NCBI RefSeq assembly: GCF_964194025.1
Contig: NC_134470.1
Coordinates: forward strand, 37,014,001-37,078,000
Source: Convolutriloba macropyga
Taxonomy: Eukaryota
Direction of reading: 5' to 3'
DNA length: 64,000 nt
A program made the position numbers and the translations under genes. Under the pieces are notes generated by a model. The model saw only the letters and a list, made by a program, of their open reading frames with translations, did no database searches and was not told where the DNA came from. Shown here in pieces: positions 24,436-59,042 of the stretch (positions are counted from its first letter, which is position 1; each line of letters begins with the position of its first letter).

Positions 24436-25498
24436 CTTAATGTAAATGCAAAAAAATAGACACAAAAAACATGAACCACTAGCAACGGGCTAATTGCTCA
24501 AAACGACCGGCGAGCGATTGCCTTTGGTCGTAGCCCTCTGGGGCTTAGGGATTCAGGCATTAGGGGATTCAAGAGTCAAACCAGGGGCTCTACTCTCGAC
24601 ACGTGGATTGGCTAGGCTTTGGTTGTTGCAGCTACCTTAAGCTTGGGCAACTAGCTCGACTGAATGAGAGGGTGTGGGCAGAGGAAAGAGGAGCATAAGA
24701 AAGGAGGGCAAAAACCACTTAAAATGACCCGCTACACCATGAATTTACATGTCTATACAGTAGAATTTGGCGAGGGGAAGGGACCAAGGGATGAATATCG
24801 TAAAATAAGTCTCTTCAGCAGTTTCGGTGAACCGCACAGTTAGAGATTAGTAGGACTTACATAACTGATCAGTGAGTTTGGGCCCTCAGGCTGTAGCGGT
24901 TTATCACGTCTACAGACAATCAGGCTAATACTATGCTCAGATGAAAAGCATAAAAAGCCTAACTTCACTATAGCAATTGCTAGAAATTTGTTTCAGGGCA
25001 AATAATGACCACAAAACCAATAAAAGAATCGAAAACGGTCCAACAAACTTCGCAAAAAACAGACACCACTAAAATTATTGGCTCAAACATCCTTCCAGAC
25101 GAATTGATCAACATAAAAACTCTGAACTATTAGCAGCCGAAGTTTTCAAACAAACAACCAAGAAACCTAGTTTGATTTCATTCGTTTCTTTGGCTCATTT
25201 AGCAAATGATTTCTTGGGAATAAACGTCAATTAACAACAATTTTGGTTGTTTTTATTTTTCATAGCTCAAGCAAAATGCATAAGCTAAACAAAATGTCAA
25301 TCGCTGCGAATTTCAACAAAAGAAAACAAATGCAGAGTTAGTTAAAACAACGCTACAGGAGATCAAAACAATTATGAACGATTATGCTGCAAGAGCAACA
25401 AAAAGAAAATAAGAGAAAAGGAAGAAAAACGCAATATTAACCCAATATATTGGCAAAAATAGCAGCAGAAACGTCTGCTCAAAAAACTTCTCAAAACC

Positions 25499-25504
25499 CC
25501 ACTG
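25499..25504 (+). repeat. Left target-site duplication CCACTG
   Basis: Identical hexamer at 53249-53254 immediately outside the other TIR. Confidence 0.95.
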
Positions 25505-25615
25505 AGAAGAATACATATGCCGATAGGGTGATATTAGGCACCCAATCAGCACATGCATTCTTCCTCGGTTTTCGGAACCTACCCGACAATGAAATTGTTC
25601 TAATTTTAGAAACAC
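25505..25615 (+). repeat. Left terminal inverted repeat
   Basis: Reverse complement of 53139-53248; 79 of the outer 83 nt identical, looser over the inner ~28 nt. Confidence 0.96.
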
Positions 25616-25616
25616 C

Positions 25617-26676
25617 TCATTTTAGAAAAAAACAAATTAAAACAAGGAGCTGCAACCTCCTCATAATTCCGCCTATATGGTTTACGTGCTTTATGAGGCT
25701 GTTGTTATTTAGAGTTTCAGCCCGTTCGAGGCGACGCAGCAATTGTGAAGGGGCTTCGTCGTCACCAATTTGTTCAGCCTGCTCAACTTCAAGGCCGGCA
25801 AGATCATCTGCCTGCCTTATGATGCTGCGGAACTGATCAACCATTTGCTGTAAAAACAAAAAAACAAAGTATATAAAGAATCCTTTACTAGAACTGTCCG
25901 CATCAGCTTTTCCCAAGACATCAACAACATTAGACAGGATCAAAATGCATTGAAAACTATTTAAGCTCACCCTGTCTCTCTCCTCTGTTTATTCTCCTCG
26001 TGTTGGGTGAAGCATTTCTGTTGGTTGCAGGTAGAGAAAGGAACCGTATTTCAGCGGCCTCACTTTCTTCATATGAGGGAGGTGGATCATCGGACACCCC
26101 GGTATTTTCGAGTGCCTGATTCGACACCTCAGCAGTATTTGGTGACTCAGGCGACGAGAGAAATACTGATTCCTCCAAAACTCTGGCGGCTTCATTCAGC
26201 AAGCCGTCACTGTTGTCATCATACCTTCCAACATGACGGCCCAGGAAAACCTAGGCTTGAGTTAAAGCCTGTCTTTCTCCGTCTCTTGGACATCCATACA
26301 TTCGGAGGAGATGGCAAAACTGCAACAGATTAGAACTGAAAGGCCTCGTATTCGCCCTCTCTTCTTCTTCCAAGGCCATCCGACTATCATCATCATCGTC
26401 CGAGGAAGAGGAGTCTAGAATATACTGCGCACCTCGGCGTCGAGGTCTCAATCTGAGCCTCCTGTTCATGGAAAATGGCTCCTCATCGTCATCTTCCACT
26501 TCTTCCAGAGAATTTTGCGCACTTCCGTTTTCATACACTAGTGCTAACTCATCTCCAATTTCCATTTCCAACTGAGGCGACGGAGGGATAGACACATCAC
26601 TTGCGTTATTGTCCGAGTTAGGATAGTCGACTAACATGGCAGAAGCAGAAATAAAATTTGAGTTGGTGCTCGACAT
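25617..26676 (-). pseudogene. Maverick accessory gene: acidic/disordered protein with PPPSY motif and helical C-terminus, probably spliced
   Basis: Three consecutive minus-strand ORFs; ATG at 26676 preceded by tttag; a 41-nt GT-AG intron at 25848-25888 restores SWEKLMRTVL|QMVDQFRSII. Confidence 0.55.
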
Positions 26677-26883
26677 TCTAAATAACTTTTTGGAAATTTT
26701 TAGGTCTGCATGTTTGTTTATTTTACTGCTTCATTTGTTTTTTTTTCTATTTTTTCTTAGTCTGTCGGATCAACTCCATCCTCTTATCGCAAAAGAAAAA
26801 TTAAATCTAATTTTGATAGCTTGCACAAGTTTTGCAAGAAAAAAATCAACTTTTCAAAGAATTTATTTTCATTGTAGAAATAC

Positions 26884-27322
26884 TTAATTTTCAGCAGCAA
26901 ATTGTAGCAACTCTTCTTCAGTTAGATAAAAAGAAAAAGTTCGGGTCGGTAAATAGATACAGTGAGCAAAGTATAAACAGTACAATGCACACAGTTTACT
27001 TGTCGCTAGCTGTTTGAACAAGGGACGAATTTCGACATATTTAATGGATGTATTTTTTGTAGAGTTTCTGCAGTCTTTTAAAAATACTCGGGAAAACTTC
27101 GTGAAGATCTCGTTTGAAGCAGTCGTAGAAAAGTAGTTGTCCATTACTGTCTGCGATCAAAAGCCAGTGTTCCCAAAAAAAGCAAGATGGTTGATTGTTA
27201 ACAATAACAAATTTGTTTCGCTGAATGAAAGGGAAGTTCTCCGCAGAATAACAGACAAGGTAACGCAGGCTAAGCTCAGAGTGTTTACTGACAAAACGAT
27301 CAATGTCACTGTTGTCAACCAT
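26884..27322 (-). pseudogene. Adenain-like cysteine (capsid maturation) protease
   Basis: IVNN...EHWLL (His), FYDCF (Asp), and after a frameshift QLATSKLCALYCLYF (Gln, Cys); start overlaps the capsid stop. Confidence 0.9.
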
Positions 27323-28678
27323 TGTATATTGCTGAGTTTTTGATAACTTCTCTATTGCAATTAACCAAAGCAACAGATTGACGTTCAGCCATAAGTATGA
27401 CTCTAATGGGTTGCTTGGTTGGTGTTTTGAATTTGAATTCGATCCCCAACCGGGCACCAGTAAGTTCTGGGCGGATTGTGCTGTCCCGTAAGTTGGAATC
27501 GGCTGTAAGATTGAAAATCAACGCAAAATGATTGGCAAAGTTATCTAGAGTAATTCCGTTGCCGCCAACAGAATGACCCAAGGCCGTCATTGTTGTGTGG
27601 TAGAGACGGACGTGGCTTTTAGAGATATCAATGGGTGTGCCACCTACTTGCGATCCTTCTCGTGTGACCCTCACTGAACTCAAATTAAAGTCCTCGAAAT
27701 TGAAAGGATTAGATTTGTACGTTCCGGTGAAAGACTTCTCTGGTACCAAGACCACAACCAATTTGCAAGCTGGAGCTCTATTGAACAAATCATCCTGGTA
27801 ATAAACGCTGGTACCTGTAGTGATTCGAAAAGAAGTAATTGGAGACTCTTGCCACTCAAATTGAGCTGCTTTTTTCTTTAAAGCTCTCTCAAGTGAAATA
27901 ACGGTCTCCGTTCGAAGTTCCAACAAGTGTACAAATAGAAGCATTTAGGACCTTGATTGTGAAACTACTCGCATCTTGACAACCTCCGGGCTGATGCATA
28001 ATGAACTTGTCCAAAGAACGTGTCAGTCTGATCCGAACTTCAACTCCAGGTACCAAATACTTGTCAACACCGTTCAAAAAGTTGTTAGAAATTGTGGAAA
28101 AAGTGTGAAAGCTACGCCCTGAGTTATTTCATACCGTCTGGAAAAAGCATCGTTTTTCAAAGTGTTGAAATCCGAAAGAGCTGGTTCAAAACTATACCAT
28201 TGAGTTGCCATTATGCTCTGCTTGGTTGTCAGGTCGTAACTGAGGTCTGCCTCTAAGATGGACTTAAGGGGGTGCAAATTGCTGGACGAGGAAACCATGG
28301 TGCCATTCAAGAAAACTTCCACATTTTGCCACAAACTATTGGCGATGTTCTTCACGAAAATTGGTAGGAGCTCGCCGTCTGTACCATCACTTTTTTTCTT
28401 CCTAACAGCTGCTTCGCCTGATGATTCTTTAATCAACAATAATTCCATAATTCCATTTTGAGTAAAATGTTGTTTAGATCGGCTACAGTTCCACATATTT
28501 CCGTACGTGGCGCCTGAAATTCAAACTCCAACACTGGGCCATCTGAGTTTCTTGGCGGGAAAATTCGTTTGTCGTAAGCGCAGACAAAATCAGCCAAAAC
28601 TTGACTTGTACCAAAGAGGTCCAACATTGAGCTGGTTGCTGAAACTGGGGGATCGGCATAGGTGAAGGAATGAGACAT
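27315..28678 (-). pseudogene. Major capsid protein (double jelly-roll), frameshifted
   Basis: GPVLEFEF, NSLWQNVEVFLNG, KYLVPGVEVRIRLTRS, FTGTYKSNPFNFEDFNL, NGITLDNF...LIFNLTAD: motifs typical of animal Polinton major capsid proteins. Confidence 0.9.
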
Positions 28679-28691
28679 TGCAATCAATCAG

Positions 28692-29250
28692 TTAGGTAGC
28701 AGCGTCGACGATGGAGGAAAAGAAATCTTGCTTGTTATAGTTCTTCTTTTTTTTCGTTATACGCCTACGGTTTGTTCTCAAGACACGCTTTTTCCTTGTG
28801 GAACGGTTTCTGATCGTTTTTCGTGCGGAGCCTTTTGATTTTCTTCTCTGGTAGCGGAAGCGCTTTTTCTTTGATTTTGTCCTTCTTTTTGTATTGGTAA
28901 TCCGTTTAGGTGTCGATGACAGACGTCGCCCTTTTTCTGTTGAACTTTTTCTTCTCGAGCGACCACTTCCAATTTGTTTTTTTACCGTTTCGCGTAAAGT
29001 TTTTTTCAGGGCAGCTTTTGGTTTTGTACGTCCCTCTATTATCCCTAGCACTTCAGGAGCGGCATATTGTACCAAGTTTTTTGATAAGGGTAGACCGTAT
29101 CGCTTTGCAAGTGGTATCACAAAACTTTTCAAACCGAGACGCAGCGCAGAACCCAGCCCACTGCCGTATTGACGATTTGTTGAACCAGAATAAAAACTAG
29201 AATTTGCTCGGGGAAAAAAGTATGCGATTAGAATGGTAGTTGACGTCCAT
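28692..29250 (-). pseudogene. Basic core-like virion protein with Q-x-G-x-G motifs
   Basis: FYSGSTNRQYGSGLGS upstream of the annotated ORF, an amphipathic segment, QIGSG, then a long K/R-rich tail; located between integrase and capsid genes. Confidence 0.7.
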
Positions 29251-31293
29251 TCAAGAACTGTTTACAAAGAAAAGTTTCTGCCTTTCCCCCGCTGACGGTG
29301 AAGCAAGGCGTTGACAACTGAATCGCTTGACAATCAATATGAGTACTGAACCGCAGGTTGCCTATCAACCCGGTCACAAACGATTTCTTAAGCTGACCAA
29401 TTAACTAGGCCCTCAGCTGCAATGCCTACTTGCTGGCGGCCACGATGTCTATCTTCGTCAAACTTAAAAGCAACTAGTTCAGAAGCATAGAGACGTCCCA
29501 AAATTTCTTTGCCTGTGTTATCATGCAGTACATAGGTTATGGGTTCACTACGATTACGCGGAATGGACACTCTTGCAACAGTAAAGACTTCATCTGTAAA
29601 TCGCTGCTTATAACCTTTCTGGAAGGGTTTTCGCTGAAAAGACAAGCGAACAGTTTGTTTTTTCCTAAAGACTTTTTTCGCCAAAACAGTTTGGGTGGCG
29701 TACGATAACTCTTCATAACTGAATTTGGTCTTTTATCGTAAGCATTGGGACTGTTTTGCAGAACAAGACTCCTAACATGTTCCTTAGAGACGTCTGCGGG
29801 AGCTAAAAGATGCTTGAGTTGACTCGAGCGTTTATCAGCCTCACAAATTGTTGAAGATGACCCAAATAAGTACATGAACCACTTTCTTATAAAAATTTGT
29901 ATAAAAATTTTTCAACGTACGCACAAACCGCTCTGCAATAGCACTTTTCGAATCACCATAAGTGCTATAAACTTCAACTCCTAGCTCCTCACAGTGTTTT
30001 CTAAAGTATCCTTTGAATTCTTTCCCTTGATCTTTCCAAAGTTTTATGGGCACTGATGTTGGTTTGATTTTCTTCTCTGGTAGCGGAAGCGCTTTTTCTT
30101 TGATTTTGTCCTTCTTTTTGTATTGGTAATCCGTTTAGGTGTCGATGACAGACGTCGCCCTTTTTCTGTTGAACTTTTTCTTCTCGAGCGACCACTTCCA
30201 ATTTGTTTTTTACCGTTTCGCGTAAAGTTTTTTTCAGGGCAGCTTTTGGTTTTGTACGTCCCTCTATTATCCCTAGCACTTCAGGAGCGGCATATTGTAC
30301 CAAGTTTTTGGATAAGGGTAGACCGTATCGCTTTGCAAGTGGTATCACAAAACTTTTCAAACCGAGACGCAGCGCAGAACCCAGCCCACTGCCGTATTGA
30401 CGATTTGTTGAACCAGAATAAAAACTAGAATTTGCTCGGGGAAAAAAGTATGCGATTAGAATGGTAGTTGACGTCCATTCAAGAACTGTTTACAAAGAAA
30501 AGTTTCTGCCTTTCCCCCGCTGACGGTGAAGCAAGGCGTTGACAACTGAATCGCTTGACAATCAATATGAGTACTGAACCGCAGGTTGCCTATCAACCCG
30601 GTCACAAACGATTTCTTAAGCTGACCAATTAACTAGGCCCTCAGCTGCAATGCCTACTTGCTGGCGGCCACGATGTCTATCTTCGTCAAACTTAAAAGCA
30701 ACTAGTTCAGAAGCATAGAGACGTCCCAAAATTTCTTTGCCTGTGTTATCATGCAGTACATAGGTTATGGGTTCACTACGATTACGCGGAATGGACACTC
30801 TTGCAACAGTAAAGACTTCACCTGTAAATCGCTGCTTATAACCTTTCTGGAAGGGTTTTCGCTGAAAAGACAAGCGAACAGTTTGTTTTTTCCTAAAGAC
30901 TTTTTTCGCCAAAACAGTTTGGGTGGCGTACGATAACTCTTCATAACTGAATTTGGTCTTTTATCGTAAGCATTGGGACTGTTTTGCAGAACAAGACTCC
31001 TAACATGTTCCTTAGAGACGTCTGCGGGAGCTAAAAGATGCTTGAGTTGACTCGAGCGTTTATCAGCCTCACAAATTGTTGAAGATGACCCAAATAAGTA
31101 CATGAACCACTTTCTTAAAAAAATTTGTATAAAAATTTTTCAACGTACGCACAAACCGCTCTGCAATAGCACTTTTCGAATCACCATAAGTGCTATAAAC
31201 TTCAACTCCTAGCTCCTCACAGTGTTTTCTAAAGTATCCTTTGAATTCTTTCCCTTGATCTTTCCAAAGTTTTATGGGCACTGATGTTGGTTT
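28837..31293. repeat. Internal tandem duplication 1 (~1229 bp: 28837-30065 and 30066-31293)
   Basis: Near-identical copies; junction ggttt|gattttc with TTT microhomology. Confidence 0.95.
29388..30065 (-). pseudogene. Duplicated 3' part of the integrase
   Basis: Copy of 30616-31293 (WKDQGKEF, AERFVRTLK, FQKGYKQRFT). Confidence 0.9.
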
Positions 31294-31720
31294 TTCGATA
31301 TTAATCATCTTTGAAAAAGCTTCAAAAGCTGCCTGAACAGATTTTGATTTCATTGTGCGAACTCGTAGAAAACGTGTTAACACATCAACTGCAATAGAGA
31401 GATACTATACGCCGTCATTTTCCTTTGAAAATTTATTCATAAAAGCGACATCAACGGACCAAATATGAATCACTCCGAGACTTCTGATTTAAGTCTTTTG
31501 AACTTTTGTCTTGCAGCTTTAAACTTTGTATACACTTTACTACTCTCCAAAAACTCGCACTTTCGACAAGGGTAACCCGCTGGCTTTTCTCAAACTGGAA
31601 ATTCCACCATAAGCCGCAGGGTTGTTCAGCGATGTGTAGATTCCTTTCAAGTAACGATACTCAGCTTCTGAGAGTCTCCGCTATTTTACCGGCCTTTTCT
31701 GTCGTTTTAACAGCAACCAT
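30616..31720 (-). pseudogene. Retroviral-like (RVE, DDE) integrase
   Basis: PAAYGG, IWSVDVAFM, AVDVLTRF, WKDQGKEF, KSAIAERFVRTLK, FQKGYKQRFT.EVF, YVLHD.TGKEI.GR.YASEL. Confidence 0.93.
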
Positions 31721-31777
31721 GCTTTCAAGCTTTCAATTCAGTATATAGAAAATATGAGTAGAACAAATCAACAACTA

Positions 31778-32552
31778 TCACTCAAGACTTAGCTTGGATG
31801 AGCTAATTTTATCGTCAATGACTTGCATCGCGCAACTGTTTAGGAGCATGGACTTTAGATGATCAACTTTTTCCTTTGTTATCGGCACCATCAATAATGT
31901 TTCAACAATTTGACGTTCCATCCAATTCAACTTTTTATTATGAATCTGCAAATTCTTAAGAAACTGTATCAGGTTAACAGAATTTGTCATCTCAACTTGA
32001 TCGCCCGACTGAAATGAATTAGATCCGAGGAGTAAGCGATTACTAGATTGGCTGAAAGAAAGACTGGGATTGGAGTCATCAGAGACAAAAGAGCTCGCAT
32101 GCAATAACGTTTCAGCATAGCACCATGTTTTTTCTGACTGTTGATTTTTGGGAGCGTGGACCTCCTTTCTTTTTTCTATACAACTGTTTCAAAGAAGAAC
32201 TGACAATCGATTCTTCCCTAACAGGGTCGAAAGAAGAGTTTCCTTCAAAATTAGTTGACAGGTTGTTTTGTCTGTTGTTGTTAGCAGCTGACTCGCTGTC
32301 GTGCTGGTTCTCTACAGGAGTAATTGAGTAGTTCAACAGTTCTCCGTGATCTTCTTTATTGACATCCGTTGTATTGAAGCTATCTGCTTTTGGGACAGAG
32401 GAATATGACCTTTTGGACTGTGGCTGCATTGCTAGCAAATTTGTATGAATAGCTTTTTTTGGCTCTTCTAGTTCTTTCAGCAACGGAACTAGTGCAAACT
32501 CAATAAACTTTGACGCTGTATTTGACGAGGCCTGCTTTGCTCGATATGACAT
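31778..32552 (-). CDS. Hypothetical Maverick protein(s), possibly one frameshifted gene
   Basis: Adjacent ORFs 32112-32564 and 31778-32104 between ATPase and integrase; no recognised motif. Confidence 0.45.
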
Positions 32553-32608
32553 AACAATAAGCACAAAAAAAATGTTAAATTAGGGGAAAAAATTTTATCG
32601 GATTTAGT

Positions 32609-33680
32609 TCAGCTGCAGTGCATGCAATGTTTAACATTTTGCTGATCAATTTTGCCACCACTCGTTAGTGTGATTGCACAATTTTCGTAAAGTTCACGGA
32701 TCGAACCATGTAATTCGTCATGTAGAAAAGAGCTGTTTTGATGGAGGGTAAAATTGTTCGAAGAGACTTGTGTAAAATCGAAAGAAATGGGTGCATTCCC
32801 CGCGACGAGGCACCGGCTGATTTGACTAGAGTCTAACGACAACTGGCACTGATCACCTGTTTCATTTTCAAAGGAACCACTGACTGCTCTCCTTTGCTTT
32901 GATTGCGTGTCAGATGATACTAAAATATCTTTTTTGCTACATACGGTAGTATTGCAGATGTAGATGCAAAATCTCAGACTATCGGGACATGTGGGTGTCA
33001 AGTCAATTAGGAAATGACCGAGTGGAAGTCTCATGCGATGCTTATAGCAGCTGTTGAAACACAGGCGTTGCAGTATCCAGCTCAAGAGCCTAAGATTTTC
33101 AATTACTTACCAACGCGTGGTGATTTTGTGAGAACGATATGCGTTGCGCTCTTATCAATGGTAACCGAATAAGGACCCTGTTGATAGAGATTGTGTTTAA
33201 TGAAAATTGAGGAGATGTTTTTATGCCTACCGGCTGTCGCCAATGTAGCGAAAACCTTGCTCTCCACAATTTCCTCACCGCAGTCATCAAAAATTAGCAG
33301 CTTTTTCTTTTGTGGGTAGCCTATGTTGCTGTGCTTCTCGGAAATAGCATGAAGCTCACTCAAAATAAGGTCGTCAACACAATATTCGTCGTTGCTAGCA
33401 CCGCTGCTGTTGTTAGTTGTTAAGGGTATTCATGATTGAATTTTTTGACTGAATGCAGCACTTGAATTCTACTGACACTTTTTCCCAAAATCTTCAAAAA
33501 ATCGTAATAAACAGGTCGCCAGTAGCGATAAATGTAAACAATGTGTTCAAAGGTGGTTCGAAAACTCCCTGTAGGACAGTAGGAGCTGATAGCATTGAAA
33601 GGATCAGCTGAGTTTTTCCAGTTCCGGAGCTTCCGCAAACACATAAAAACACGCTCTTTCGTTGATATTAACTTATTCAA
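32609..33680 (-). pseudogene. A32/FtsK-like DNA packaging ATPase
   Basis: Walker A GSSGTGKT (alternate frame near 33615-33635), Walker B LLIFDD, AGRHKNIS, KHNLYQQG, KSPR, GHFLIDLTP. Confidence 0.92.
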
Positions 33681-34470
33681 TACTGCTCATACATGTGGTT
33701 GTCTTGTGCTGCGGAGTGAACGGGGGGTAACAAAAAAGTCAGACAATATGTAATGACCATAAAATATGCAGTTTTTAGCTCACAACTGAGAGTGTCAGAG
33801 GCAGACGACAGCTGGCTACAAGCAATTGAAACCATCACAATTACAAAAAAAATTGAGTATAGAAGGTAGCACGGGTTCTTTCTATTGCACAGCACACAAA
33901 CTCCCAAACATTATGCTGCTGTGAGGTTTTTGATGCTTTAGCATCTTGAATCCTGTCGGCTCCGTCTATTTGGTCAACAGCATCAGCAATGTCAGAATCG
34001 CCAGCTTTACTACCTCTCTGCAACTTTCTAACAACGTGAACTTCAGGGGTTGGCCTCGGAGCAGTCACGAGATAGCCGATACAAGTGCTCAACAAAGTTA
34101 GATACGTCGTATTCTCTTCGCAGAGGAAGGGCGAGGAATGGTGCGTTTCATCACTTGTAGACCCCGCGGTTGCTTTCTTTCGACCCGAGAACCCACTCTT
34201 AGATAACTTGTAGAGATACAAAAAGTTAACAAACACAATCACAATGCATTGTGAAAATCTGTTGATTGGGCCAAAAATAACGAGTGCCAAGTCTTGGTTT
34301 GAATTTTCTTGAACCTTGCAATCTTCAGTTACATTATCTCCGCCCATGTTGTAAAACGTTCTTCCATCGCTCGAATCTGTTGTTTGTTCTTGTACATTAG
34401 ACGGCCGCTGCTGATGATTAGTGTCTTTCATAATTAAAATGAGAGAGCGTGTGCTGAATGGGGTATTCAT
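33677..34470 (-). pseudogene. Putative membrane protein with two similar two-helix hydrophobic modules
   Basis: FSQCIVIVFVNFLYLYKL...YLTLLSTCIGYLVTAP and YSIFFVIVMVSIACSQL...YFMVITYCLTFLLPP in overlapping frames. Confidence 0.5.
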
Positions 34471-34499
34471 TTTGTCTCTTACCCCTATTGGAGAAAAAG

Positions 34500-35760
34500 A
34501 AAAAAACTTCCATTGACATTGATTGACAGATAGATAGATAGATAGACAGATAGATATTGATTAGTATCAAAATGAAAAAAAATAGTAGCCTCAAAAATCC
34601 AAAATTTTGACAGTCAAAAAACCAAAATTTTGACAGAATTTTTGTCTAATTGCATTATCTAATTGATTGCAGTATCATCAATCAGCAGCGTAGTATAATA
34701 ATTCTATTGAGTTTTTTAATTGAGTTGAGTTCAGTTGAGTTGAGTTGAGTTGAGTTGAGTGAGTGAGTTAGTTCGAGTCAAGTGTGTGTGTGTTGAGTTC
34801 AACAAAATGTCAGAGGCAGGCCTCCAAAAGACGAACGCTTTGATGTTGCTGTGCCTGAGGTCTTTTTTGCAGCGGATGATTTGTTGTTGTTTGATCAAAA
34901 AGTTGAAGACTATTTGGACGCAGTGCAGTGGACTGACTGGAGGGATGCACTCTCGTTGTTTTTGACAGTAGAGCTGACGAGTTCAGTTTTGGATATAGTC
35001 ACCCTCCTGCTCCTCTTCCCATTTAAATCTAAGTGGCTGCTTTCCATTGATGTTGTTGTTGCGTTATTTCCTAACAATTCCATATAATTTCCGCACGGCG
35101 TCGCACCGCCCGAAGATTACGCGCCATCCGAAGCCCGAGCAGCGCGTCCGCCGCCGTAGCCCCGCTCGGCGTCGTCCGCGGGCGGCCCTTCGTTCGATCG
35201 GGCAGCGCGTCCGCCATCGGCGCCGTCCGCAGACCGCGCGCCCACGTCGTCCGCGGGCGGTCCGTCGTTCCTCAACTCAGAATTAAAACAACTGCTTTTT
35301 TCTTCCCCTACCTGTTGTTGTTGTTTTTTTTTCTAATCATCTCGTTGTTATCGTTGTTGTGAATAATGTGTTTTTTTCGCTGCAGTTGCAAATGACGGGG
35401 AGCCACCACTTTAGAAATTAGGTGACCAGTCGGGCAAAATACTTGTTTGACACACACACACACACACACACACACGCAGCCAGTCAGTCAATTGAAACCA
35501 GGCAGGAAATTTGTTTGTAACGATTTTTTTGTCTTCAAAGCATCTGAAAAACAAAAGACTTTTTTCTATTGAGAAATACAGGGCCTTTATCGTGAAAATA
35601 AACCAAAAAATTAGTTTATGAAAAAATGATGTATATCACGTCCATCCATCCAACTCATTGTTGACGATCTCCTCATTGCTGTTTTCTTTGCTTTTCTTTT
35701 GCCATAAATACAAAGTTCTATCGAACAAATTAATGTTATCAATCAATCCATCAATCAATC
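34500..35760. promoter_or_regulatory. Internal non-coding region with a CpG island (35090-35280) and GATA, GAGTT and CA microsatellites
   Basis: Abrupt GC/CpG-rich patch with repeats cgtcgtccgcgggcgg x2 and gcagcgcgtccgcc x2, upstream of the structural gene block; regulatory role is inferred. Confidence 0.4.
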
Positions 35761-36129
35761 AACCAACCAACTAAGCAACCATTACAAAAAGGAACTTGAT
35801 AATGAAAAACTGCATAGCTAGGCGTATGATCTAGGTCATTGACAAATATTCTTCTATTAATTATTCTATCAACAACAACAGTATATTTTGAACAATTTCC
35901 CTTGCACAACGAAAAATTAGGAAAATTAGATAGAAACAGCAAAAGAAGCGCCATTTTTAGTAACAAAAGGAGACACAGTACAAAAACAAAAAGAATCCAT
36001 TTTTGTTCTGGCAGCAAAGAAGCGAGCAGCTATAGAAAATAAGTATCAAATGAAAAAAAAATGTAAATAAAAAAATGTAAATTAGTAGCAAGAAATACAA
36101 AAAATAGTGTTTTCCGAAACACCAGCTTA

Positions 36130-46689: not shown

Positions 46690-46949
46690 TGATACTTGTC
46701 TGAAAAACACAGTACTATAAGCTTGTTCAAGGTTTGAAAAAAGGACCAACAATAGCTGGAATGAGGTGACGAGTAAAAGCTGCAAAAAATGTTTTTTATT
46801 TAAAAAACAGTAGCAAACGAATACAAACGTATCGTATATAGGTTGATCAAGGAGAGGAGAATAATAATCAGGTAAGCAATCAATCAGTTGGATCAAAGCT
46901 GTGTGATATCATTCAGACGGTTTCATTTTTTCATATTGGAAGAATTGCT

Positions 46950-47585: not shown

Positions 47586-47609
47586 TCTAAATTATTGCAA
47601 GCAATGAAA

Positions 47610-48329
47610 CTATGAACTAATTTTTTGAAAGAAAAGTGTTGCGTAGGTACGAACAGCTCCCGTGAAAGGTATCAGTTTCCCAGTATCACTTCGAATTTCA
47701 ATCAAAATATCTTGAATATAGGTTTTATTAACAAGCTTAGCTTGAGTTTTGTCAAAAGAGTGACGATATACAGCTGGATATCCGAAACGGCCTGCGATGG
47801 AGGACTCCACCTTTTCAGGACCGATTTGAGTTGCGTCAGATAAAGGGAAAGATCTCAATAAGGTTGCCTTGGTATTGCCAACAAACTGTGGCTCAATAAT
47901 GTCACGACAAACAAAAGCAAGATGATAAATTGATATCCGTTGGAAAAACTGGCTTATCTTCAAACTGGTTGGTTCCGGAGGAAAGTTTATTATGCGTCTC
48001 CAACGGAGATTTCTCTAATCCTAATATGTATCTGAGATCATCGGTAACATTTGTCAGATGAACACAGTCCTTTCCTTCGCATAGAACAACAAAGCCTTTG
48101 GACGTAAGTTCATTTTTCGGGAAAAACTGAAAACCTTTTTTACTTTATCGAAAATAGATTCTTGTCCTCTGGATGAATAGATTCCTTTTTCCATGTTATC
48201 AATCAATTCGAACACGCTATTGTACAAACATTTAGGAACGCGACAATTTGATAAGTAGATGCCAAGTTTTCCATTGATATAGTAAAATTTACCTTCAACG
48301 ATATTGAAGAACTTTTTTGGGCAAGTTAT
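47610..48329 (-). pseudogene. Minor capsid protein, 5'-truncated duplicate
   Basis: Copy of 50133-50852. Confidence 0.85.
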
Positions 48330-48437
48330 TGAAGAACTTTTTTGGGCACTCAATGGTATGTTGAACATTTTGCTATGCTATGGTTTGGCAGCGAAGAATC
48401 AAGTCTTCAAGAGTCACATTCGAGCATGTCAGCATTT

Positions 48438-49210
48438 TCATACAAGTTTCTTATACACTTTTGATCGCCTCTCGTCTTCAATGTCATTGAACAGATCGCT
48501 TTTTGCTTCGTACAAAAAACCAAGCATCCAAAAATAGCGCTTGATGTTATTTGTTTCCGGGGAACCTATGATTATTTGGAGAAGTAGGCTCTTTAAATTA
48601 GCTATCATGAAGTCAAAAGCAGTATTCAATTTTTCTCGCGTTGCAACATATTTGAACTTCGCATAAAGATCATCACATTGACCCTCTGCGATAGCCTTGA
48701 GCATCATGTTGCACAGCAATATTTGATTTGTTTGTTTACTGACAACTTTCTTCACTACGTCAATCCCGAACATTTGCGCTATCTGGGTTATTTGAACATT
48801 TCCACTACCCTAAACAGAACACAATAAAATTATTGAGGCTCAGCAAATTATCGAAGTGATTTGTTTTTTGTATCTTTTAGGGTTCGATACTGCCCATCTC
48901 AATACAGTACAGTATATGTCATCCTTCAAAACATGGGGTGTTTTTAAAGCTAAAAGCTTCTTATTACCTCGTCAGTAACGTCTTCATCGTCCAAGTCAAC
49001 AACTTCAGTGGTAGAGCTCGCTTGTTGGGAGTTGTCGTCGACAGACTCTTCGATTTCAATCCGGTTGGAATTGCCTTCATCATCCTCTAGTGTAACATGA
49101 AAACCGTCCGGTTGCCTTGTCAAACGTGCCCGCTTCACAGCAAGATTAAGGCCGCGACTAAGGTCAATTGCTTCGCAACTCACTGCTTCAGAAGAACTGA
49201 CAGAAGTCAT
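48438..49210 (-). pseudogene. Three-exon accessory gene, copy 2
   Basis: Duplicate of 45917-46689. Confidence 0.55.
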
Positions 49211-49469
49211 TGATACTTGTCTGAAAAACACAGTACTATAAGCTTGTTCGAGGTTTGAAAAAAGGACCAACAATAGCTGGAATGAGGTGACGAGTAAAAG
49301 CTGCAAAAAATGTTTTTTATTTAAAAAACAGTAGCAAACGAATACAAACGTATCGTATATAGGTTGATCAAGGAGAGGAGAATAATAATCAGGTAGGCAA
49401 TCAATCAGTTGGATCAAAGCTGTGTGATATCATTCAGACGGTTTAAAATTTTTTCATATTGGAAGAATT

Positions 49470-50108
49470 GCTCTTCACTATTTGACTAGCTTTGAATTTG
49501 ACTGGGGATCGCCAAATATCTGCATCCTGTTCATTTCAAAATGAGACATCCTCTGTAACAGGGATAGCAAAGTCCTCGGAAAGTCGTCCCCAACTTGAGA
49601 CTGGGTTTATATTTCACCTTCGTCGCCGATCGTTTCGCCATTTAATTTGTGTTCAACTTCCACAACTTTCGTCTTCATTTTCTTCCCTTCAACAAAGGCG
49701 CTATTGCATCTAATTGCTTCAAGGGATTGCCAGCTCAAAAGACTCCCGCAGTGCCAAATCTGTCAAGCTCAAGGTGTCACTGGATTTACTACCAATAATT
49801 TTTGTGACGTTGATCATTTCGTCCATTGTGAGCTATAAACTCGATTGTCGTGTCCATTTATCAGTTATTGTATTGATTTTTGAATCAACCGTAGTTGTTA
49901 GTTTGATGACCTTAATGTAAGCGTATACGCTCGTTTCAAATTTTCTGAGCCCGACTCTTACAAATCGGTTGTTTTTTGGATCCAGGTCCCACACGTTATC
50001 CGATTTTGATACCTCAAGATCTTCTTCAGGCGTTATTCCGGTGAAAGGCTGTGCATTTTGTCGCTCGAGGTCATTTTCTTCTTTTCGTTTTCTGATCCAG
50101 TGCGCCAT
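49470..50108 (-). pseudogene. PC4/Sub1-like protein, copy 2
   Basis: Duplicate of 46950-47585. Confidence 0.4.
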
Positions 50109-50132
50109 TCTAAATTATTGCAAGCAATGAAA

Positions 50133-51005
50133 CTATGAACTAATTTTTTGAAAGAAAAGTGTTGCGTAGGTACGAACAGCTCCCGTGAAAGGTATGAGTT
50201 TCCCAGTATCACTTCGAATTTCAATCAAAATATCTTGAATATAGGTTTTATTAACAAGCTTAGCTTGAGTTTTGTCAAAAGAGTGACGATATACAGCTGG
50301 ATATCCGAAACGGCCTGCGATGGAGGACTCCACCTTTTCAGGACCGATTTGAGTTGCGTCAGATAAAGGGAAAGATCTCAATAAGGTTGCCTTGGTATTG
50401 CCAACAAACTGTGGCTCAATAATGTCACGACAAACAAAAGCAAGATGATAAATTGATATCCGTTGGAAAAACTGGCTTATCTTCAAACTGATTGGTTCCG
50501 GAGGAAAGTTTATTATGCGTCTCCAACGGAGATTTCTCTAATCCTAATATGTATCTGAGATCATCGGTAACATTTGTCAGATGAACACAGTCCTTTCCTT
50601 CGCATAGAACAACAAAACCTTTGGACGTGAGTTCATTTCTCGGGAAAAACTGAAAACCTTTTTTACTTTATCGAAAATAGATTCTTGTCCTCTGGATGAA
50701 TAGATTCCTTTTTCCATGTTATCAATCAATTCGAACACGCTATTGTACAAACATTTAGGAACGCGACAATTTGATAAGTAGATGCCAAGTTTTCCATTGA
50801 TATAGTAAAATTTACCTTCAACGATATTGAAGAACTTTTTTGGGCAAGTTATGCTAGAGAGGGAAACGGTCCACTGATTATCGTTAAGTTCTAGAGGTGC
50901 ACTGAGTGATGTACGGAAGGACGCAAGTGTATTGTCGGGATAGCAATCAAGCGACGCAATGGATGATAAATCAATCGTAAAGAAACTGTTTTCTAATTTT
51001 GTCAT
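50133..51005 (-). pseudogene. Minor capsid (penton) protein
   Basis: FFTIDLSSIASLDCYPDNTLASFRTSLSAPLEL...WTVSLSSI and DIIEPQFVGNTKATLLRSF...IEIRSDTGKLIPF, typical N- and C-terminal motifs of Polinton minor capsid proteins. Confidence 0.88.
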
Positions 51006-51354
51006 CAAAAGGTTGCAATCACCACTGCCTAAAGTTGGCAAGCACTTCCTCTTTAAAATAATTTTAAAAAACCGCTTATGGCGCAAACTGTGTTTTAATC
51101 AAAATTTTAACTTAATAACAATGTCGGAATGAAGACCAAGATGCTTTTGGATATAAGTTGGATGACACTCCTCCACTTTTTTTCTTCCAATGAGAAACAA
51201 AATTTAGTAGTGCAAGCTAATCTAAAACAAAGTGGAAGGGCTGTTTTTTTAAAAAACGCAAACAAGACCTCGTAAAACGCAAACAAAACGCAAGTAAAAA
51301 TGAGAAATCACTAATTTATTTTTGTTGATGAAAAGCAAAAACAGCGAAAGAACG

Positions 51355-52585
51355 AATTTTACAATTTGTAAAATTGGAGCAAGATATCCCTCCCACGTTA
51401 GAAATAATCCTCTTTTTTAAAATCTGTAAACAGGAGCAATAAATAGAATTTACAATTATTCCGAACGAGGAACATAGTTGAAATTTTACAATTTGTAAAA
51501 AGTGGAAGCTGAGTTTTTTTTACAATTTTTAAAAAAAAATAGAAGCTGAGTTTTTCACAATTTGTAAAAAGTAGAAGTTGAATTTTTACAATTTGTAGAA
51601 AGAGATGCCTAAAAATTTGACAATTTGTGAGAGGAACGTAGTTGAAATTTTACAATTTGTAAAAAGTAGAAGCTGAATTTTTTTTACAATTTGTAAAAAT
51701 TAGAAGCTTAATTTTTTACAATTTGTAAAAAGTAGAAGCTGAATTTTCTTACAATTTGTAAGAACTAAAAAATTACAGCAGCAAGACAAAAATAGGTAAA
51801 ACTTACTCGAATAAACAACAACGCTAGGACAAAATCAAAAATTTCAGTCGAGAAGGAGCAACCAAATGACGGTTAGCAACAGTGAGCAAAATGATTTACT
51901 TGGAGCGAGGCAAAGCTAACCTCAACTTGCTAGTCGATAAAACAACCAATCAGAAAAAGTCTGGAAAAATGATCCACAAAACAAAGCATTAAAGCATAGA
52001 GTTCTATCAGAAAAAGTATCAAAAACGAAAAAAGAGCAAAGAATGAATGAAAAGTAGAGAAAAAATTAACCAATCAGTTTTCTTCGCTAACTCAAATTAA
52101 AATTCGGAAACACAAAACGAATCAACAAAAAGGTTGTTTTCATAGTGAATCAAGTTTCTTACAATTTGTAAAAAAATTTTACATTTTGTAAAAATGAGTT
52201 GATCCGACAGACAGGTATCACGATAAAAAGATTAAGATTTTTACATTTTGTAAAATTTCTTTTACAAATTTTAAAAATTGTGCCTGTTTTAGTTTTTGAA
52301 AGAACTTTCGATTTTCCTTGAAACGATGAAAGTTTTACATTTTGTAAAAAAAATTGCAATAGGTACTGTTTGTTTTCAGAATTTAAAATAATTTTTTAGA
52401 ACTATAATTTTTTTACAATTTGTGAAAATAGTTTACAATTTACGTTTTGTAACATAAACTGATTGTTTTTTAGAATTTGCAATACTATTGAAGAAAAGCA
52501 GTTTTTACAATTTGTAAAAAAATTTACAATTTGTAAAAACAAATTTTATACATTTTGTAAAAATTATTTTACAAAATGTAATTTT
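51355..52585. repeat. Subterminal array of palindromes TTTTACAA-T-TTGTAAAA
   Basis: About 18 exact or variant copies in two clusters (51355-51762 with ~32-bp period; 52157-52585). Confidence 0.85.
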
Positions 52586-53138
52586 TTCTGCAAATATAAG
52601 AAACGCTGACTGTGTGCATGTATCAGTCAGTTGTTGCGTATAAACGCGTGATTGTGTGTGGGAGTGTGTGTGTGTGTGGGTGAGTGGGTAGTGTTGATGG
52701 AGGGGGGTACACATTTTTAGTAACTACTTTTTGATAACTTTTTTGATAATTTTTTAACACGCAGCCTTTTTCAAATACGTAGGTTGAATAAGTTGGGAAT
52801 ACATTTGACTATTTAGAATGAGTAAAATTGTTGAGGCAAAAATACTGTTTTTTGTACGTGAGGATAAAGCGTGTTGATATTAAGAGCTATGACAAATTAA
52901 TGTGCTTGCTCTAACAAACAGGAAGTTATTTTAGCAAACACACATACTCACGCACGCATACACTCATACACAACACAAGCAAACACACATACTCACGCAC
53001 ACATACACTCATACACAACACAAACACAAACGCGCACTCAAAAGGGAACAATACAGCAGCTGAAAAAAGTGGGGGGAATTATGACGCTGTATGTTTTGCT
53101 ATTGAAAAAATTGAAAAAGGAAAATGAATAAGCTTACT

Positions 53139-53248
53139 GTGTCATCTAAAAATAGAACATGATTAGTCGGGTAGGCTCCGAAAACCAAGGAAGAATGCAT
53201 GTGCTGATTGGGTGCCGAGTATCACCCTATCGGCATATGTATTCTTCT
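53139..53248 (-). repeat. Right terminal inverted repeat
   Basis: Reverse complement of 25505-25615; ends ...GTATTCTTCT. Confidence 0.96.
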
Positions 53249-53254
53249 CCACTG
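53249..53254 (+). repeat. Right target-site duplication CCACTG
   Basis: Matches 25499-25504. Confidence 0.95.
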
Positions 53255-56460: not shown

Positions 56461-56627
56461 TCGTTTTCCAATTAATTTCCGTTAAGGCTCCTGAAGTGCC
56501 GTCGTCTCTTTAAACAGGTAAAAACTAAACGACCAAGCTTAGGACAATGGCCCACCAGATAAAGTAAATGCGCAAGCAATTTAGATCACGCACTAATCGT
56601 GCCAAATAAAACAACAGGAAATGTAAA

Positions 56628-57130
56628 CATAGCTGGCAGATTGCCAGAAAATAGCCGCAATAGACTCGTAGATCGGCAGTCTCAAAAAGAAACAGTAAAA
56701 AAGACAGACCAAAAAAAATTGTCTTTTCATTGAAGACTGATATGTTATATTTTGACTAAAAATCTATAAATTGCCGCTGCCTCTATTAGCTGCTCTCAAA
56801 TAACCTTCATTTAGAGTGACAAACACCCATTTGACCTTATCTCTTTGAATTAAAGTAAAAAGTCAATTTCAAAGTGAGGAAGTCATTTTTGAGAGTGAGG
56901 TAAGTCAAGTGTGACCAAAAATTTAATCACGCGATTGAACAAAAAAACTCGCTCCACTAAGAGCGAAAAATGACGTCACGCATGCAATTCAGTTGAAATT
57001 GCATGAACGAATGAACAAAAAGTGGCTGTGACGTCATATGGTCGTAACAAAAATCATGACGACGAAATAAAAAAAAACCAAGAGAAGGCCAATAATAGCC
57101 CCAGCTATCGCTGTGCGGCTATTAATAAAA
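56628..57130 (+). repeat. ~500-bp dispersed repeat family ending in a short hairpin; other copies at ~63155-63703, ~14410-14925, ~15472-15990
   Basis: Shared start g(c/t)cggcagattgc..gaaaatagc, internal agtgaggtaagtca, end aatagcc...ggctattaat. Confidence 0.6.
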
Positions 57131-57327
57131 ACATGTATTCAACAGAACAAATGCAAAACTAAGTTGCAAACACTACAATACAAAATAATCATGAACAATT
57201 CTGGCGCGTAGGACAACAAAAAGAACCTAATTCCAAAAACGTCGGACGAATTGCTCTCGAAGAACTGGCGAGGCAATTAATTTAGAAGGGGGCATGGGCA
57301 AGAGAAAATTTTATGATGCAAAAACTT

Positions 57328-57405
57328 CGGACTAGGCAGAGGCTTGAACCAGCGTCCCACCGGAAGAGAATCCGAGACGCTAACCACTATGCTAAACGGT
57401 CTATG
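57328..57405 (-). pseudogene. Degenerate tRNA-like relic
   Basis: Minus strand TAGCATAGTGG (A-box)...GGTTCAAGCC (B-box), then T5; flanks resemble those at 13503-13575. Confidence 0.45.
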
Positions 57406-57679
57406 CACGATCGGTTTTGTTATTGCAACAGACTCAATTTCTGAATGCTCATAAGTGAAAACATAAACCGACTAAAAAAGACACACGTTTAAAATAGTTG
57501 CTTCAAACTTTGTTCGAGAGCATTTATTGAAAAGCAATTGCTGTAAAGAAAAAAAATCAAAAAGTCAAGCGTGAAAAGGACACTCGAAAATGTGAAAAAG
57601 AAAGAATACGTTATAGAAAAAAAAGTAAAGCAAAAAAATTGCATAAAAAAGACACGTTTACAAGAAATGCTTCAAACTT

Positions 57680-57930
57680 CGAGAGCAATAAGGAGGCAAA
57701 GAAACAAAAATAACCCAAGACATGCGCAAAAAAAGAAGGTTCTACTAAAAAAAACTTTCAAAACTCACTGTTTCAGCATTTCTGTCCAATAAGAATTAGG
57801 CAGCTGTTTTAAATCGAACAAGAAGCTGCGTTTAAAAGCTAAATCAACGTACTCGAAGGTTCTATGCCATTTTGCCTGACTCAGTTTCCGTTAATGAGCT
57901 GCACAGACGCCAAGAACCGGAATCAAATTC
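57680..57930 (+). repeat. Uninterrupted paralogue of the repeat into which the Maverick inserted
   Basis: aaaaaactttcaaaac-tcactg-tttcagcatttctgtcca joins the left and right Maverick flanks with a single target hexamer (57765-57770). Confidence 0.85.
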
Positions 57931-59042
57931 CGCACAAAAGTCAAAAATCTGTGCAACTCCTGGGCGCAGTACAATGCGTGATCAAAAGGCAGTAACAAAA
58001 CTAATAAAAATAGATTGAATGAGTGAAGAGAATGGAAACAAATGTGGCGAAATTTTCATTTGACTTTAGTGGTAGTAAACTGCCACAAAATTTCACCGGC
58101 TAAAAATCATGAATGTGCGACTAATTTAGATTGCGCAAAACAAACAGTCAAGTGGGGGCCTGATCAACAGGATGACTCAAATGGTCGACACTTAATTTTG
58201 TTTCAACTGGACGACAAATCCATGCATTCTCAATTTTAATCCACAATGTAGTCACAAGCATCCATAACGACTAATTTAAACAGGAAAGAAGGAAAAATCA
58301 TATAGTTTACTATAAAATGTCCCTCGCGGGCCATGTCCGTGCCTCAGCGGCCCGTGGGACTCGATATGAATCTATCACAACCGAACGTGTGAGCGCGCCC
58401 GAATCTATCACAACTGGCCCTTCAATTATAAGCGCATATTGATATTTTGCATGTATTAATTAATTCGGTGTCGTCCGTTTGAAACGCCCCCAAGTTAGGT
58501 ACTCAAACTCGCTCAAAAGCCAAAAACAGTCGATAGAAAACCTTGGATAAAAGGTACGCTCGTCTACGAAAATGGCTTCATACTTCGTTCGAGAGCAATT
58601 ACCAACAATTCATTAATTTGAACAATAAATACAAGCCGACAAAAAATCGGATGAGTTGATCTCCAACAACAAGCTTGATCTCAATTTAATTCAGTGCGTA
58701 TAAATCCTTGGATATAACTTTGCTAAAAATCTTCAAATGATGTCTTAGACTTATGGACCCCTGCTGAGTGAAAAAAAAATAAACTAAATTTGGTGCCTTT
58801 TTCATACGACTTAGCACTAAATTCCCGCGAACTGTTCAGCTGCTTAAATTCTGAATGAGAGCAACTTCAATGAGGCAAAAATCGAGAATCACTCAAACGA
58901 TCGAAAGAATGTCCTAAAGTGAAACCATCCACACAAATTTCGCGTGAAGACACGCACGTGTATAACAATTGCTCCAAACTTCCTTCGATAGCAATTTAAA
59001 AATTTCCAAAAAAATTTCCATCAACTGAAAATGAATTCTAAC

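What the first reader, a model, noticed from the sequence alone, without database searches (positions are those of the whole stretch)
24436..59042. Complete endogenous dsDNA virus-like element in sense orientation inside an intron of a TBK1/IKK-epsilon antiviral kinase gene
Seen: intact in-frame kinase exons on both sides of a 27.7-kb Maverick that makes up most of a 34.6-kb intron, with all element genes on the host's strand. Known: TBK1/IKKe act downstream of STING and RLR sensing. Inference: the many sense acceptors could trap the host donor at 59042, truncating the kinase before its catalytic loop, or host transcription could drive element-derived RNA or small RNA. The insertion site may equally be chance.
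Basis: partly seen in the sequence, partly recalled or inferred. Interest (0 to 1): 0.7.

Follow-up and report, generated by a model that had tools for sequence, protein, structure and literature searches.

The report
Dead Maverick fossil inside TBK1-like intron
A 27.7-kb virus-like Maverick/Polinton transposon does sit, in the same orientation as the host gene, inside an intron of a TBK1/IKK-epsilon-like kinase gene of an unidentified invertebrate, but it is a decayed copy of a family with many copies, all its core genes are broken, and nothing in the sequence suggests it does more than get spliced out.

Summary
On the minus strand, four collinear exons match TBK1/IKKe homologues (aa ~82-335). 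The intron between the hinge exon (ends 59043) and the HRD/DFG exon (starts 24435) is 24436-59042 (34,607 bp), with a GT donor, an AG acceptor and phase 1. Inside lies a 27,744-bp element (25505-53248). It has ~107-nt imperfect TIRs and a perfect 6-bp target-site duplication (CCACTG). All its genes are on the host's strand.

An intact ~26.1-kb relative in the same ENA metagenome assembly served as comparator. It shows that the family carries protein-primed PolB, rve integrase, A32-type ATPase, a double jelly-roll capsid protein, an adenain-like protease and a probable penton. This is a genuine Maverick/Polinton.

"Complete" holds only structurally. All six core genes in the window copy carry frameshifts and/or premature stops (PolB 12+5). 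Two tandem duplications and a terminal deletion are also present. The copy has the most private changes of the three copies compared.

Acceptor-like motifs and AATAAA poly(A) signals show no sense-strand excess. The family has dozens of copies.

Most likely this is an old, inert, chance insertion tolerated in a long intron. The gene-trap and small-RNA ideas are untested and unsupported.

The parts
59043..59172 (-). Host TBK1/IKKe-like exon A (kinase hinge / subdomain V). The acceptor at 59174-59173 is the likeliest; the donor GT is at 59042-59041.
24436..59042 (-). Host intron (34,607 bp, phase 1) that holds the element. It would be about 6.86 kb without the element.
24245..24435 (-). Host exon B: catalytic loop (HRD...N), DFG and activation segment with a Ser at the TBK1 S172-equivalent position.
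23587..23779 (-). Host exon C (kinase C-lobe).
17816..18065 (-). Host exon D (end of the kinase domain and start of the ubiquitin-like domain).
25499..25504 (.). Target-site duplication CCACTG, left copy.
53249..53254 (.). Target-site duplication CCACTG, right copy.
25505..53248 (-). Maverick/Polinton element, 27,744 bp, with termini AGAAGAATAC...GTATTCTTCT. It is a degraded copy.
53145..53248 (.). Terminal inverted repeat at the element's 5' end in gene orientation.
25505..25610 (.). Terminal inverted repeat at the element's 3' end in gene orientation.
50133..51005 (-). Penton-like gene g1 (291 aa in the relative), broken. A second, partial copy at 47610-48329 comes from the 2.5-kb tandem duplication.
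45852..50108 (-). Accessory ORFs g2, g3 and g4. Each is present twice because of the tandem duplication, and all copies are broken.
44473..45588 (-). Small accessory ORFs g5 and g6. Their frames are open over nearly full length, but each differs from the relative by frameshifting indels.
39555..44119 (-). Protein-primed family B DNA polymerase gene (1546 aa in the relative), broken: 12 frameshifting indels and 5 stops.
33681..39435 (-). Accessory ORFs g8, g9, g10, g11 and g12, all broken.
32634..33679 (-). A32/FtsK-type packaging ATPase gene (352 aa in the relative), broken: 9 frameshifting indels, 1 stop, start codon changed.
31778..32552 (-). Conserved ORF g14 (243 aa in the relative), broken.
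29388..31720 (-). rve integrase gene (370 aa in the relative), broken: 6 frameshifting indels, 2 stops, and interrupted by a 1.2-kb tandem duplication that also yields a partial extra copy of g16.
28692..29250 (-). Conserved ORF g16 (189 aa in the relative). One frameshifting indel; the frame is otherwise open.
27315..28678 (-). Double jelly-roll major capsid protein gene (453 aa in the relative), broken: 3 frameshifting indels.
26750..27322 (-). Adenain-like cysteine protease gene (190 aa in the relative), broken: 2 frameshifting indels and 2 stops.
25642..26676 (-). Family-specific ORF g19 (414 aa in the relative), broken. The two small ORFs that follow it in the relative are deleted here.

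Best explanation
This is an old, mutationally dead copy of a Maverick/Polinton family that has many copies in this genome. Shown: it integrated by its integrase, leaving a 6-bp target-site duplication, into a pre-existing ~6.9-kb intron of a TBK1/IKKe-like kinase gene of an unidentified invertebrate. By chance it landed in the same orientation as the gene. Shown: it then decayed (frameshifts, stops, two internal tandem duplications, a terminal deletion). Inferred: it is now carried passively and removed with the intron by normal splicing from 59043 to 24435. It has no role in the kinase's function, and the site carries no meaning with respect to antiviral signalling.
For: Integration is genuine. 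The TIRs and the perfect TSD CCACTG have the same terminal architecture as a relative with TSD CACTTG. Family identity rests on PolB, rve and A32 Pfam hits, a DJR capsid fold, an adenain-like protease and a probable penton. Decay: 94-96% nt identity to an intact relative, with every core gene carrying frameshifts and/or stops. The longest open stretch is 13-49% of the reference length in core genes. Over 7.8 kb the window copy has 4.0% private substitutions and 41 private indel events, against 1.2% and 21 for the intact copy. Copy number: 90%-identity protein clusters of 7-63 members on many contigs of the same assembly. The host exons flanking the intron keep canonical splice sites, compatible phases and the catalytic motifs. 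There is no sense-strand excess of acceptor-like motifs or AATAAA signals.
Against: No transcript, small-RNA or population data could be consulted, so passive splicing is inferred and not shown. Exons for TBK1 aa 1-80 and beyond aa 335 were not found in the window, so it is not proven that the host gene is whole and functional. The internal tandem duplications are 99-100% identical. They are therefore much younger than the rest of the decay, or they are assembly artefacts.
Confidence: 0.8

Rival explanations
1. Gene trap or attenuator. Cryptic acceptors or poly(A) signals of the sense-oriented element capture the donor at 59042. This would yield transcripts that end before the catalytic loop and so lower or modulate TBK1/IKKe output.
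For: The intron lies 12 codons upstream of the HRD motif, so a trapped transcript would encode a catalytically dead N-lobe fragment. The element carries 33 crude acceptor-like motifs, 20 AATAAA and 9 ATTAAA on the sense strand.
Against: The antisense strand has just as many acceptor-like motifs and AATAAA (32 and 21) and more ATTAAA (18). The motif density is no higher than in the native part of the intron, so the orientation adds nothing measurable. The insertion has been tolerated long enough for ~4% private divergence while the flanking exons stayed intact. There are no expression data.
Confidence: 0.07
2. Small-RNA source. Host-driven transcription through the fossil copy feeds a piRNA/siRNA pathway that silences the intact members of the same family.
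For: Intact relatives at 94-96% nt identity exist in the same genome, so RNAs derived from this copy would match them. The copy lies inside a transcription unit.
Against: The copy is in sense orientation, so host read-through yields sense RNA rather than the antisense RNA needed to target element mRNAs (inference from established small-RNA biology). No small-RNA data are available. Dozens of other copies could serve equally well.
Confidence: 0.06
3. Assembly artefact. The contig is chimeric across the element, or the element was collapsed or misplaced from another locus.
For: The family has many copies. The window copy contains two 99-100% identical internal tandem duplications that three other copies lack. 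The source is a metagenome assembly.
Against: A perfect 6-bp TSD flanks the element. The exons on the two sides are consecutive parts of one gene with matching splice phase. The copy carries many private changes not seen in the other copies.
Confidence: 0.03
4. The host kinase locus is itself a partial or pseudogenised paralogue, so the insertion has no bearing on antiviral signalling.
For: No exon for aa 1-80 was found in the unmasked 59.2-64 kb, and none for aa >335 in 1-17.8 kb.
Against: The four exons found are open, have canonical splice sites and keep the HRD, DFG and activation-loop Ser. Introns here are long. The C-terminal scaffold domain is poorly conserved. Part of the upstream region is masked, and the contig extends well beyond the window.
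Confidence: 0.1

Closest known systems
Maverick/Polinton elements of animals (Kapitonov & Jurka 2006 and Pritham et al. 2007, from my own knowledge; vertebrate survey PMC8097293)
   Same: It is 15-30 kb long with TIRs and a 6-bp TSD. It carries protein-primed PolB, rve integrase, A32-type ATPase, adenain-like protease, a DJR major capsid protein and a penton-like protein. It is one of many copies, most of them degraded; in vertebrates 96% of loci are eroded.
   Different: This is a new family. Relatives were found only in unnamed ENA metagenome assemblies, with MCP identity of 24-56% between families. All ~21 ORFs lie on one strand, the penton-like gene sits at the far 5' end, and PolB is long (1546 aa). 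The termini (AGAAGAATAC) differ from the (AG)3 or (AGT)2 end motifs reported for vertebrates. The TIRs are short (~110 nt) and inherently imperfect (91-93% even in the intact copy).
Mavirus and Sputnik virophages (capsid module)
   Same: The predicted MCP fold matches the Sputnik (3j26_A) and mavirus (6g43) MCPs. The g1 model's top hits are the mavirus and Sputnik pentons. The protease is of the adenain type.
   Different: Sequence identity is only 9-13%. The element is integrated in an animal genome, and nothing links it to a giant virus.
Polinton insertions reshaping the C. elegans eri-6/7 locus (PMC11414722)
   Same: A Polinton is inserted within a host defence-pathway gene, which raises the question of effects on host gene structure and expression.
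   Different: There, several insertions caused an inversion and TIR-derived repeats support trans-splicing, with expression data to back it. Here there is a single insertion confined to an intron, no rearrangement of host exons and no expression evidence.
TBK1/IKK-epsilon kinases
   Same: The best PDB matches of three exons are TBK1. Full-length homologues named TBK1 or IKK by their sources (Armadillidium, Atheta, Chamberlinius) align collinearly over aa ~82-335.
   Different: Identity is only 33-60% per exon. The N-terminal and C-terminal parts were not located, and the host species is unknown.

Membership tests
Maverick/Polinton | Protein-primed family B DNA polymerase | tested here: met
   Three pieces of the window copy hit Pfam DNA_pol_B_2. 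The relative has a 1546-aa ORF with the same hit. The window gene is broken.
Maverick/Polinton | Retroviral-type (rve) integrase | tested here: met
   A window piece hits Pfam rve, and so does the 370-aa ORF of the relative. The window gene is broken.
Maverick/Polinton | A32/FtsK-HerA-type packaging ATPase | tested here: met
   Pox_A32 hit on a window piece, 28.6 bits against a cutoff of 22.8. The relative's 352-aa ORF has a weak hit. L010 has a Pox_A32 homologue.
Maverick/Polinton | Double jelly-roll major capsid protein | tested here: met
   The AF2 model of the 453-aa protein has pLDDT 78. Foldseek hits PBCV-1 Vp54 and the Sputnik and mavirus MCPs at E 1e-15 to 1e-12 with TM 0.5-0.6. The window orthologue is 95% nt identical and broken.
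Maverick/Polinton | Single jelly-roll penton (minor capsid) protein | tested here: inconclusive
   The AF2 model of g1 is poor (pLDDT 58). Even so, the top 30 Foldseek hits are all penton proteins (mavirus 6g41 at E 3.6e-5, Sputnik, adenovirus), though with low TM of 0.25-0.32.
Maverick/Polinton | Adenain-like (clan CE) cysteine protease | tested here: met
   His, Asp, Gln and Cys are invariant across four homologues. The profile hits adenovirus proteinase 1avp (E 3.4e-4), SENP1 and ASFV S273R.
Maverick/Polinton | Terminal inverted repeats and a 6-bp target-site duplication | tested here: met
   The TIRs are ~107 nt and 91% identical. The TSD is CCACTG in the window and CACTTG in the relative.
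'Intact' (potentially active) Maverick as defined in PMC8097293 | Uninterrupted core ORFs together with TIRs and a TSD | tested here: not met
   All six core genes carry frameshifts and/or stops. Their longest open stretch is 13-49% of the reference length.
TBK1/IKK-epsilon kinase | Protein kinase catalytic core (HRD loop, DFG, activation-loop Ser) most similar to TBK1 | tested here: met
   Exon B matches TBK1 at E 5e-16, against 1.6e-6 for IKK-beta. Exons A and C also match TBK1 best.
TBK1/IKK-epsilon kinase | Ubiquitin-like domain directly after the kinase domain | tested here: inconclusive
   Exon D aligns to aa ~247-335 of full-length TBK1-type proteins, but no Pfam domain is called on the piece.
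TBK1/IKK-epsilon kinase | N-terminal Gly-rich loop and catalytic Lys, plus the C-terminal scaffold/dimerisation domain | tested here: inconclusive
   Neither was found in the unmasked window. They may lie in the masked stretch, lie outside the window, or be too diverged to detect.

The most novel reading that the evidence does not exclude
The sense-oriented fossil Maverick is not neutral. It supplies cryptic splice or termination sites that create a truncated, kinase-dead N-lobe isoform of the TBK1/IKKe-like protein, or it lowers full-length output. Either would tune antiviral signalling in a host whose genome still carries intact members of the same virus-like family.
Probability: 0.05. Interest if true: 0.6.

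Novelty: new member of a known kind. Interest (0 to 1): 0.22.

Why it matters
As it stands this is an ordinary event: one of dozens of copies of a Maverick family landed in a long intron and decayed there. Two things are modestly useful. First, the family has not been described before. It has apparently intact ~26-kb copies carrying the full Maverick core (the penton only probable) in an unidentified invertebrate, and related families occur in three further metagenome assemblies. That adds to the known diversity of animal Mavericks. Second, the locus is a clean, TSD-defined case of a very large sense-oriented insertion tolerated inside an innate-immunity kinase gene. If host transcript data showed chimeric or truncated isoforms, it would be a natural example of a virus-like element modulating an antiviral kinase, but nothing in the sequence points that way.

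Tried and rejected
1. I considered introns as the cause of the fragmented element ORFs and rejected this. An otherwise collinear relative, 94-96% identical, has long uninterrupted ORFs, so the fragmentation is decay.
2. I considered sequencing error as the cause and think it unlikely. The host exons are clean, the contig is a high-coverage assembly (56x by its name, which I read as that of a long-read metagenome assembler), and the intact relative comes from the same assembly.
3. Two IMG/VR scans with element pieces found no relatives.
4. Pfam found nothing for the accessory ORFs. PDB sequence searches found nothing for g14 or g16, or for the protease as a single sequence. Only the four-sequence profile reached adenain.
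5. The homologue search for g19 found only close family members.
6. TIR divergence cannot be used as a clock, because the TIRs are equally imperfect in the intact copy.
7. I looked for an empty allele or second haplotig; the exon-D ORF occurs on this contig only.
8. An empty-site comparison with the nearest related gene (L012, a different assembly) was inconclusive. Intron DNA shows no similarity, there is no Maverick within 8 kb upstream of its exon B, and its exon A was not found.
9. Searches for further host exons found nothing.
10. Rfam and tRNA scans of the window found nothing.
11. A literature search found no paper linking Mavericks/Polintons with TBK1.


Full report
**Observation**

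The window comes from ENA metagenome assembly ERZ25071359, contig ctg34501_56x_l (148.5 kb); window base 1 is record base 31105. Its only N run is 60924-61451, which I left untouched.

Four exons on the minus strand align collinearly, without gaps in query order, to aa ~82-335 of full-length TBK1/IKKe-type proteins:
- 59172-59043
- 24435-24245
- 23779-23587
- 18065-17816

Those homologues were retrieved with the exon-D piece. Some are named TBK1 or IKK by their sources: Armadillidium vulgare, Atheta coriaria and Chamberlinius; a Solemya velum protein is unnamed.

Against the PDB, exon B (HRD, DFG, activation-loop Ser) matches TBK1 at E 5e-16 and IKK-beta at 1.6e-6. Exons A and C also match TBK1 best.

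All borders are canonical AG/GT with compatible phases. The intron between exons A and B is exactly 24436-59042 (34,607 bp, phase 1) and lies 12 codons before the HRD motif.

**The element**

An inverted-repeat pair bounds a 27.7-kb insert.

I compared the termini with other copies of the family. This places the ends at AGAAGAATAC...GTATTCTTCT, so the element is 25505-53248 (27,744 bp). It is flanked by a perfect 6-bp duplication CCACTG at 25499-25504 and 53249-53254. A relative has the 6-bp duplication CACTTG.

The duplication, together with consecutive exons of one gene on either side, argues strongly against a chimeric assembly.

**Family**

A 270-aa open piece of the element has 86-88% identical homologues in the same assembly.

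One of them lies in an apparently intact copy on contig ctg34188_55x_l. I read that copy as three overlapping loci, L003, L007 and L005, and never joined them. It is ~26.1 kb with about 21 ORFs, all on one strand.

I identified the core genes on this copy and on more distant relatives:
- **PolB:** 1546 aa, Pfam DNA_pol_B_2.
- **Integrase:** rve, 370 aa.
- **ATPase:** A32-type, 352 aa.
- **Major capsid protein:** a 453-aa protein whose AF2 model (pLDDT 78) matches the double jelly-roll capsid proteins of PBCV-1, Sputnik, mavirus and iridoviruses at E 1e-15 to 1e-12.
- **Protease:** a 190-aa protein directly after it, with invariant His, Asp, Gln and Cys. Its profile hits adenovirus proteinase, SENP1 and ASFV S273R.
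- **Probable penton:** a 291-aa protein whose weak model (pLDDT 58) nevertheless retrieves only penton proteins as its top 30 hits.

The window copy itself gives Pfam hits for PolB, rve and Pox_A32. This is a Maverick/Polinton by every defining feature tested, with the penton tentative.

The family has many copies. Protein clusters at 90% identity have 7-63 members on many contigs of the same assembly. Families with 36-56% MCP identity occur in three other ENA assemblies.

**State of the window copy**

The window copy is collinear with the intact relative at 94-96% nt identity within genes, and all matched genes are on the minus strand.

| Gene | Frameshifting indels / stops | Other damage |
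|---|---|---|
| PolB | 12 / 5 | one indel of 30 nt or more; start codon changed |
| ATPase | 9 / 1 | start codon changed |
| Integrase | 6 / 2 | interrupted by a ~1.2-kb tandem duplication |
| MCP | 3 / 0 | |
| Protease | 2 / 2 | |
| Penton-like g1 | 2 / 0 | a second, partial, more damaged copy |
| g9 | 0 / 2 | |
| g10 | 3 / 4 | |
| g19 | 8 / 3 | |

- The remaining accessory ORFs each carry 1-3 frameshifting indels.
- A ~2.5-kb tandem duplication doubles g1 (partly) through g4.
- The two small ORFs at the 3' end of the relative are deleted.
- In the six core genes the longest open stretch is 13-49% of the reference length. Three small ORFs (g5, g6, g16) remain open over nearly their full length.
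- In a three-way comparison over 7.8 kb, the window copy has 4.0% private substitutions and 41 private indel events. The intact copy has 1.2% and 21. Another fragmented copy has 3.1% and 22.
- Both tandem duplications are 99-100% identical between their units and are absent from the three other copies compared. They are therefore recent, or possibly assembly artefacts.

"Complete" is thus true only of the architecture: TIR to TIR, with all core genes represented. The copy is a coding fossil.

**Mechanism**

The best-supported account is an integrase-mediated insertion into a pre-existing ~6.9-kb intron, followed by neutral decay and removal with the intron by ordinary splicing.

Shown:
- The insertion signature.
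- The decay.
- The intact flanking exons.

Inferred:
- Canonical splicing, and the absence of any effect on the host.

| Motif | Element, sense | Element, antisense |
|---|---|---|
| Crude acceptor-like motifs | 33 | 32 |
| AATAAA | 20 | 21 |
| ATTAAA | 9 | 18 |

The acceptor-like density is 1.2 per kb in the element, against 1.6 per kb on the sense strand of the native intron.

Sense orientation also fits the small-RNA idea poorly, because host read-through would yield sense RNA. With dozens of copies in the genome, one copy in some immune gene's intron, in one of two orientations, needs no special explanation.

**Comparison with the literature**

In vertebrates 96% of Maverick loci are eroded, and "intact" elements are defined by uninterrupted ORFs plus TIRs and 6-bp TSDs (PMC8097293). 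The window copy fails the ORF criterion.

The nearest precedent for Polintons affecting a host defence gene is the C. elegans eri-6/7 locus (PMC11414722). There, several insertions rearranged exons, which is not the case here.

No paper in the library links Mavericks/Polintons with TBK1.

**Limits**

- The host species is unidentified. The best named homologues are from a bivalve, an isopod, a millipede and a beetle, at 33-60% identity per exon.
- Exons for aa 1-80 and for aa >335 were not located.
- No alternative haplotig and no informative orthologous empty site was found.
- No expression or population data exist in the tools.

Before I knew that the element's genes were broken, I did the following:
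- My scripts printed stop-free stretches with coordinates inside the element.
- I used such stretches as queries.
- One search printed blastn block bounds between the relative and the window.

From then on only counts and outer gene bounds were printed.

Noticed in passing
window 8406-11832: A 3.4-kb array of a 13-nt unit (AAAGTGAGAAAAG, ~273 copies, 77% matches). It causes the extreme GC and AT skew at 8-12 kb and a spurious 1055-aa ORF on the minus strand, inside or next to the host gene's downstream region.
   Followed up: partly
window 3571-5411 (minus strand): A fragment of a LINE-like retrotransposon: weak Pfam hits to Exo_endo_phos (4725-5411) and RVT_1 (3571-4218). A related RT fragment also lies near the TBK1-like gene of the other assembly (L012 17459-18134).
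   Followed up: partly
L007 7391 onward and L005 up to 14963 (contig ctg34188_55x_l of ERZ25071359): An apparently intact ~26.1-kb member of the same Maverick family. All ~21 ORFs are open and the TSD is CACTTG. PolB of 1546 aa is also full length in at least one more copy (P0118). The family may therefore still have coding-competent copies in this host.
   Followed up: partly
termini of four copies: window 25499-25504 and 53249-53254; L007 7385-7390; L006 ~7373-7378; L004 ~567-572: Three of the four 5' flanking hexamers contain CACT (CCACTG, CACTTG, CACTTC). This may reflect a weak target preference of the integrase, but the sample is far too small to judge.
   Followed up: no
L008 (ERZ26859043), L009 (ERZ25074608), L010 (ERZ25071281): Related Maverick families (MCP 36-54% identical) in other metagenome assemblies share a conserved block: g16-like ORF, then MCP, then a protease overlapping the MCP stop. 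In L009 and L010 the penton-like gene sits just upstream of this block, whereas in the window's family it is at the far 5' end. In L010 the PolB is on the opposite strand.
   Followed up: partly
L012 8191-10300 (ERZ26859043, ctg87290): The nearest TBK1-like gene found elsewhere (53-55% aa identity in exons B and D) has exons C and D fused. The intron between C and D in the window (~5.5 kb) is therefore absent there, which indicates intron gain or loss between the two genes.
   Followed up: no
window 52300-53100: The element's ~2.2-kb 5' region upstream of the first gene (~2.6 kb in the relative) holds no ORF of 100 aa or more. It is AT-rich and contains clusters of short palindromic TTTTACAATTTGTAAAA-like repeats and a 45-nt CA-rich tandem pair. 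These may be regulatory or origin-like sequences of the family.
   Followed up: no
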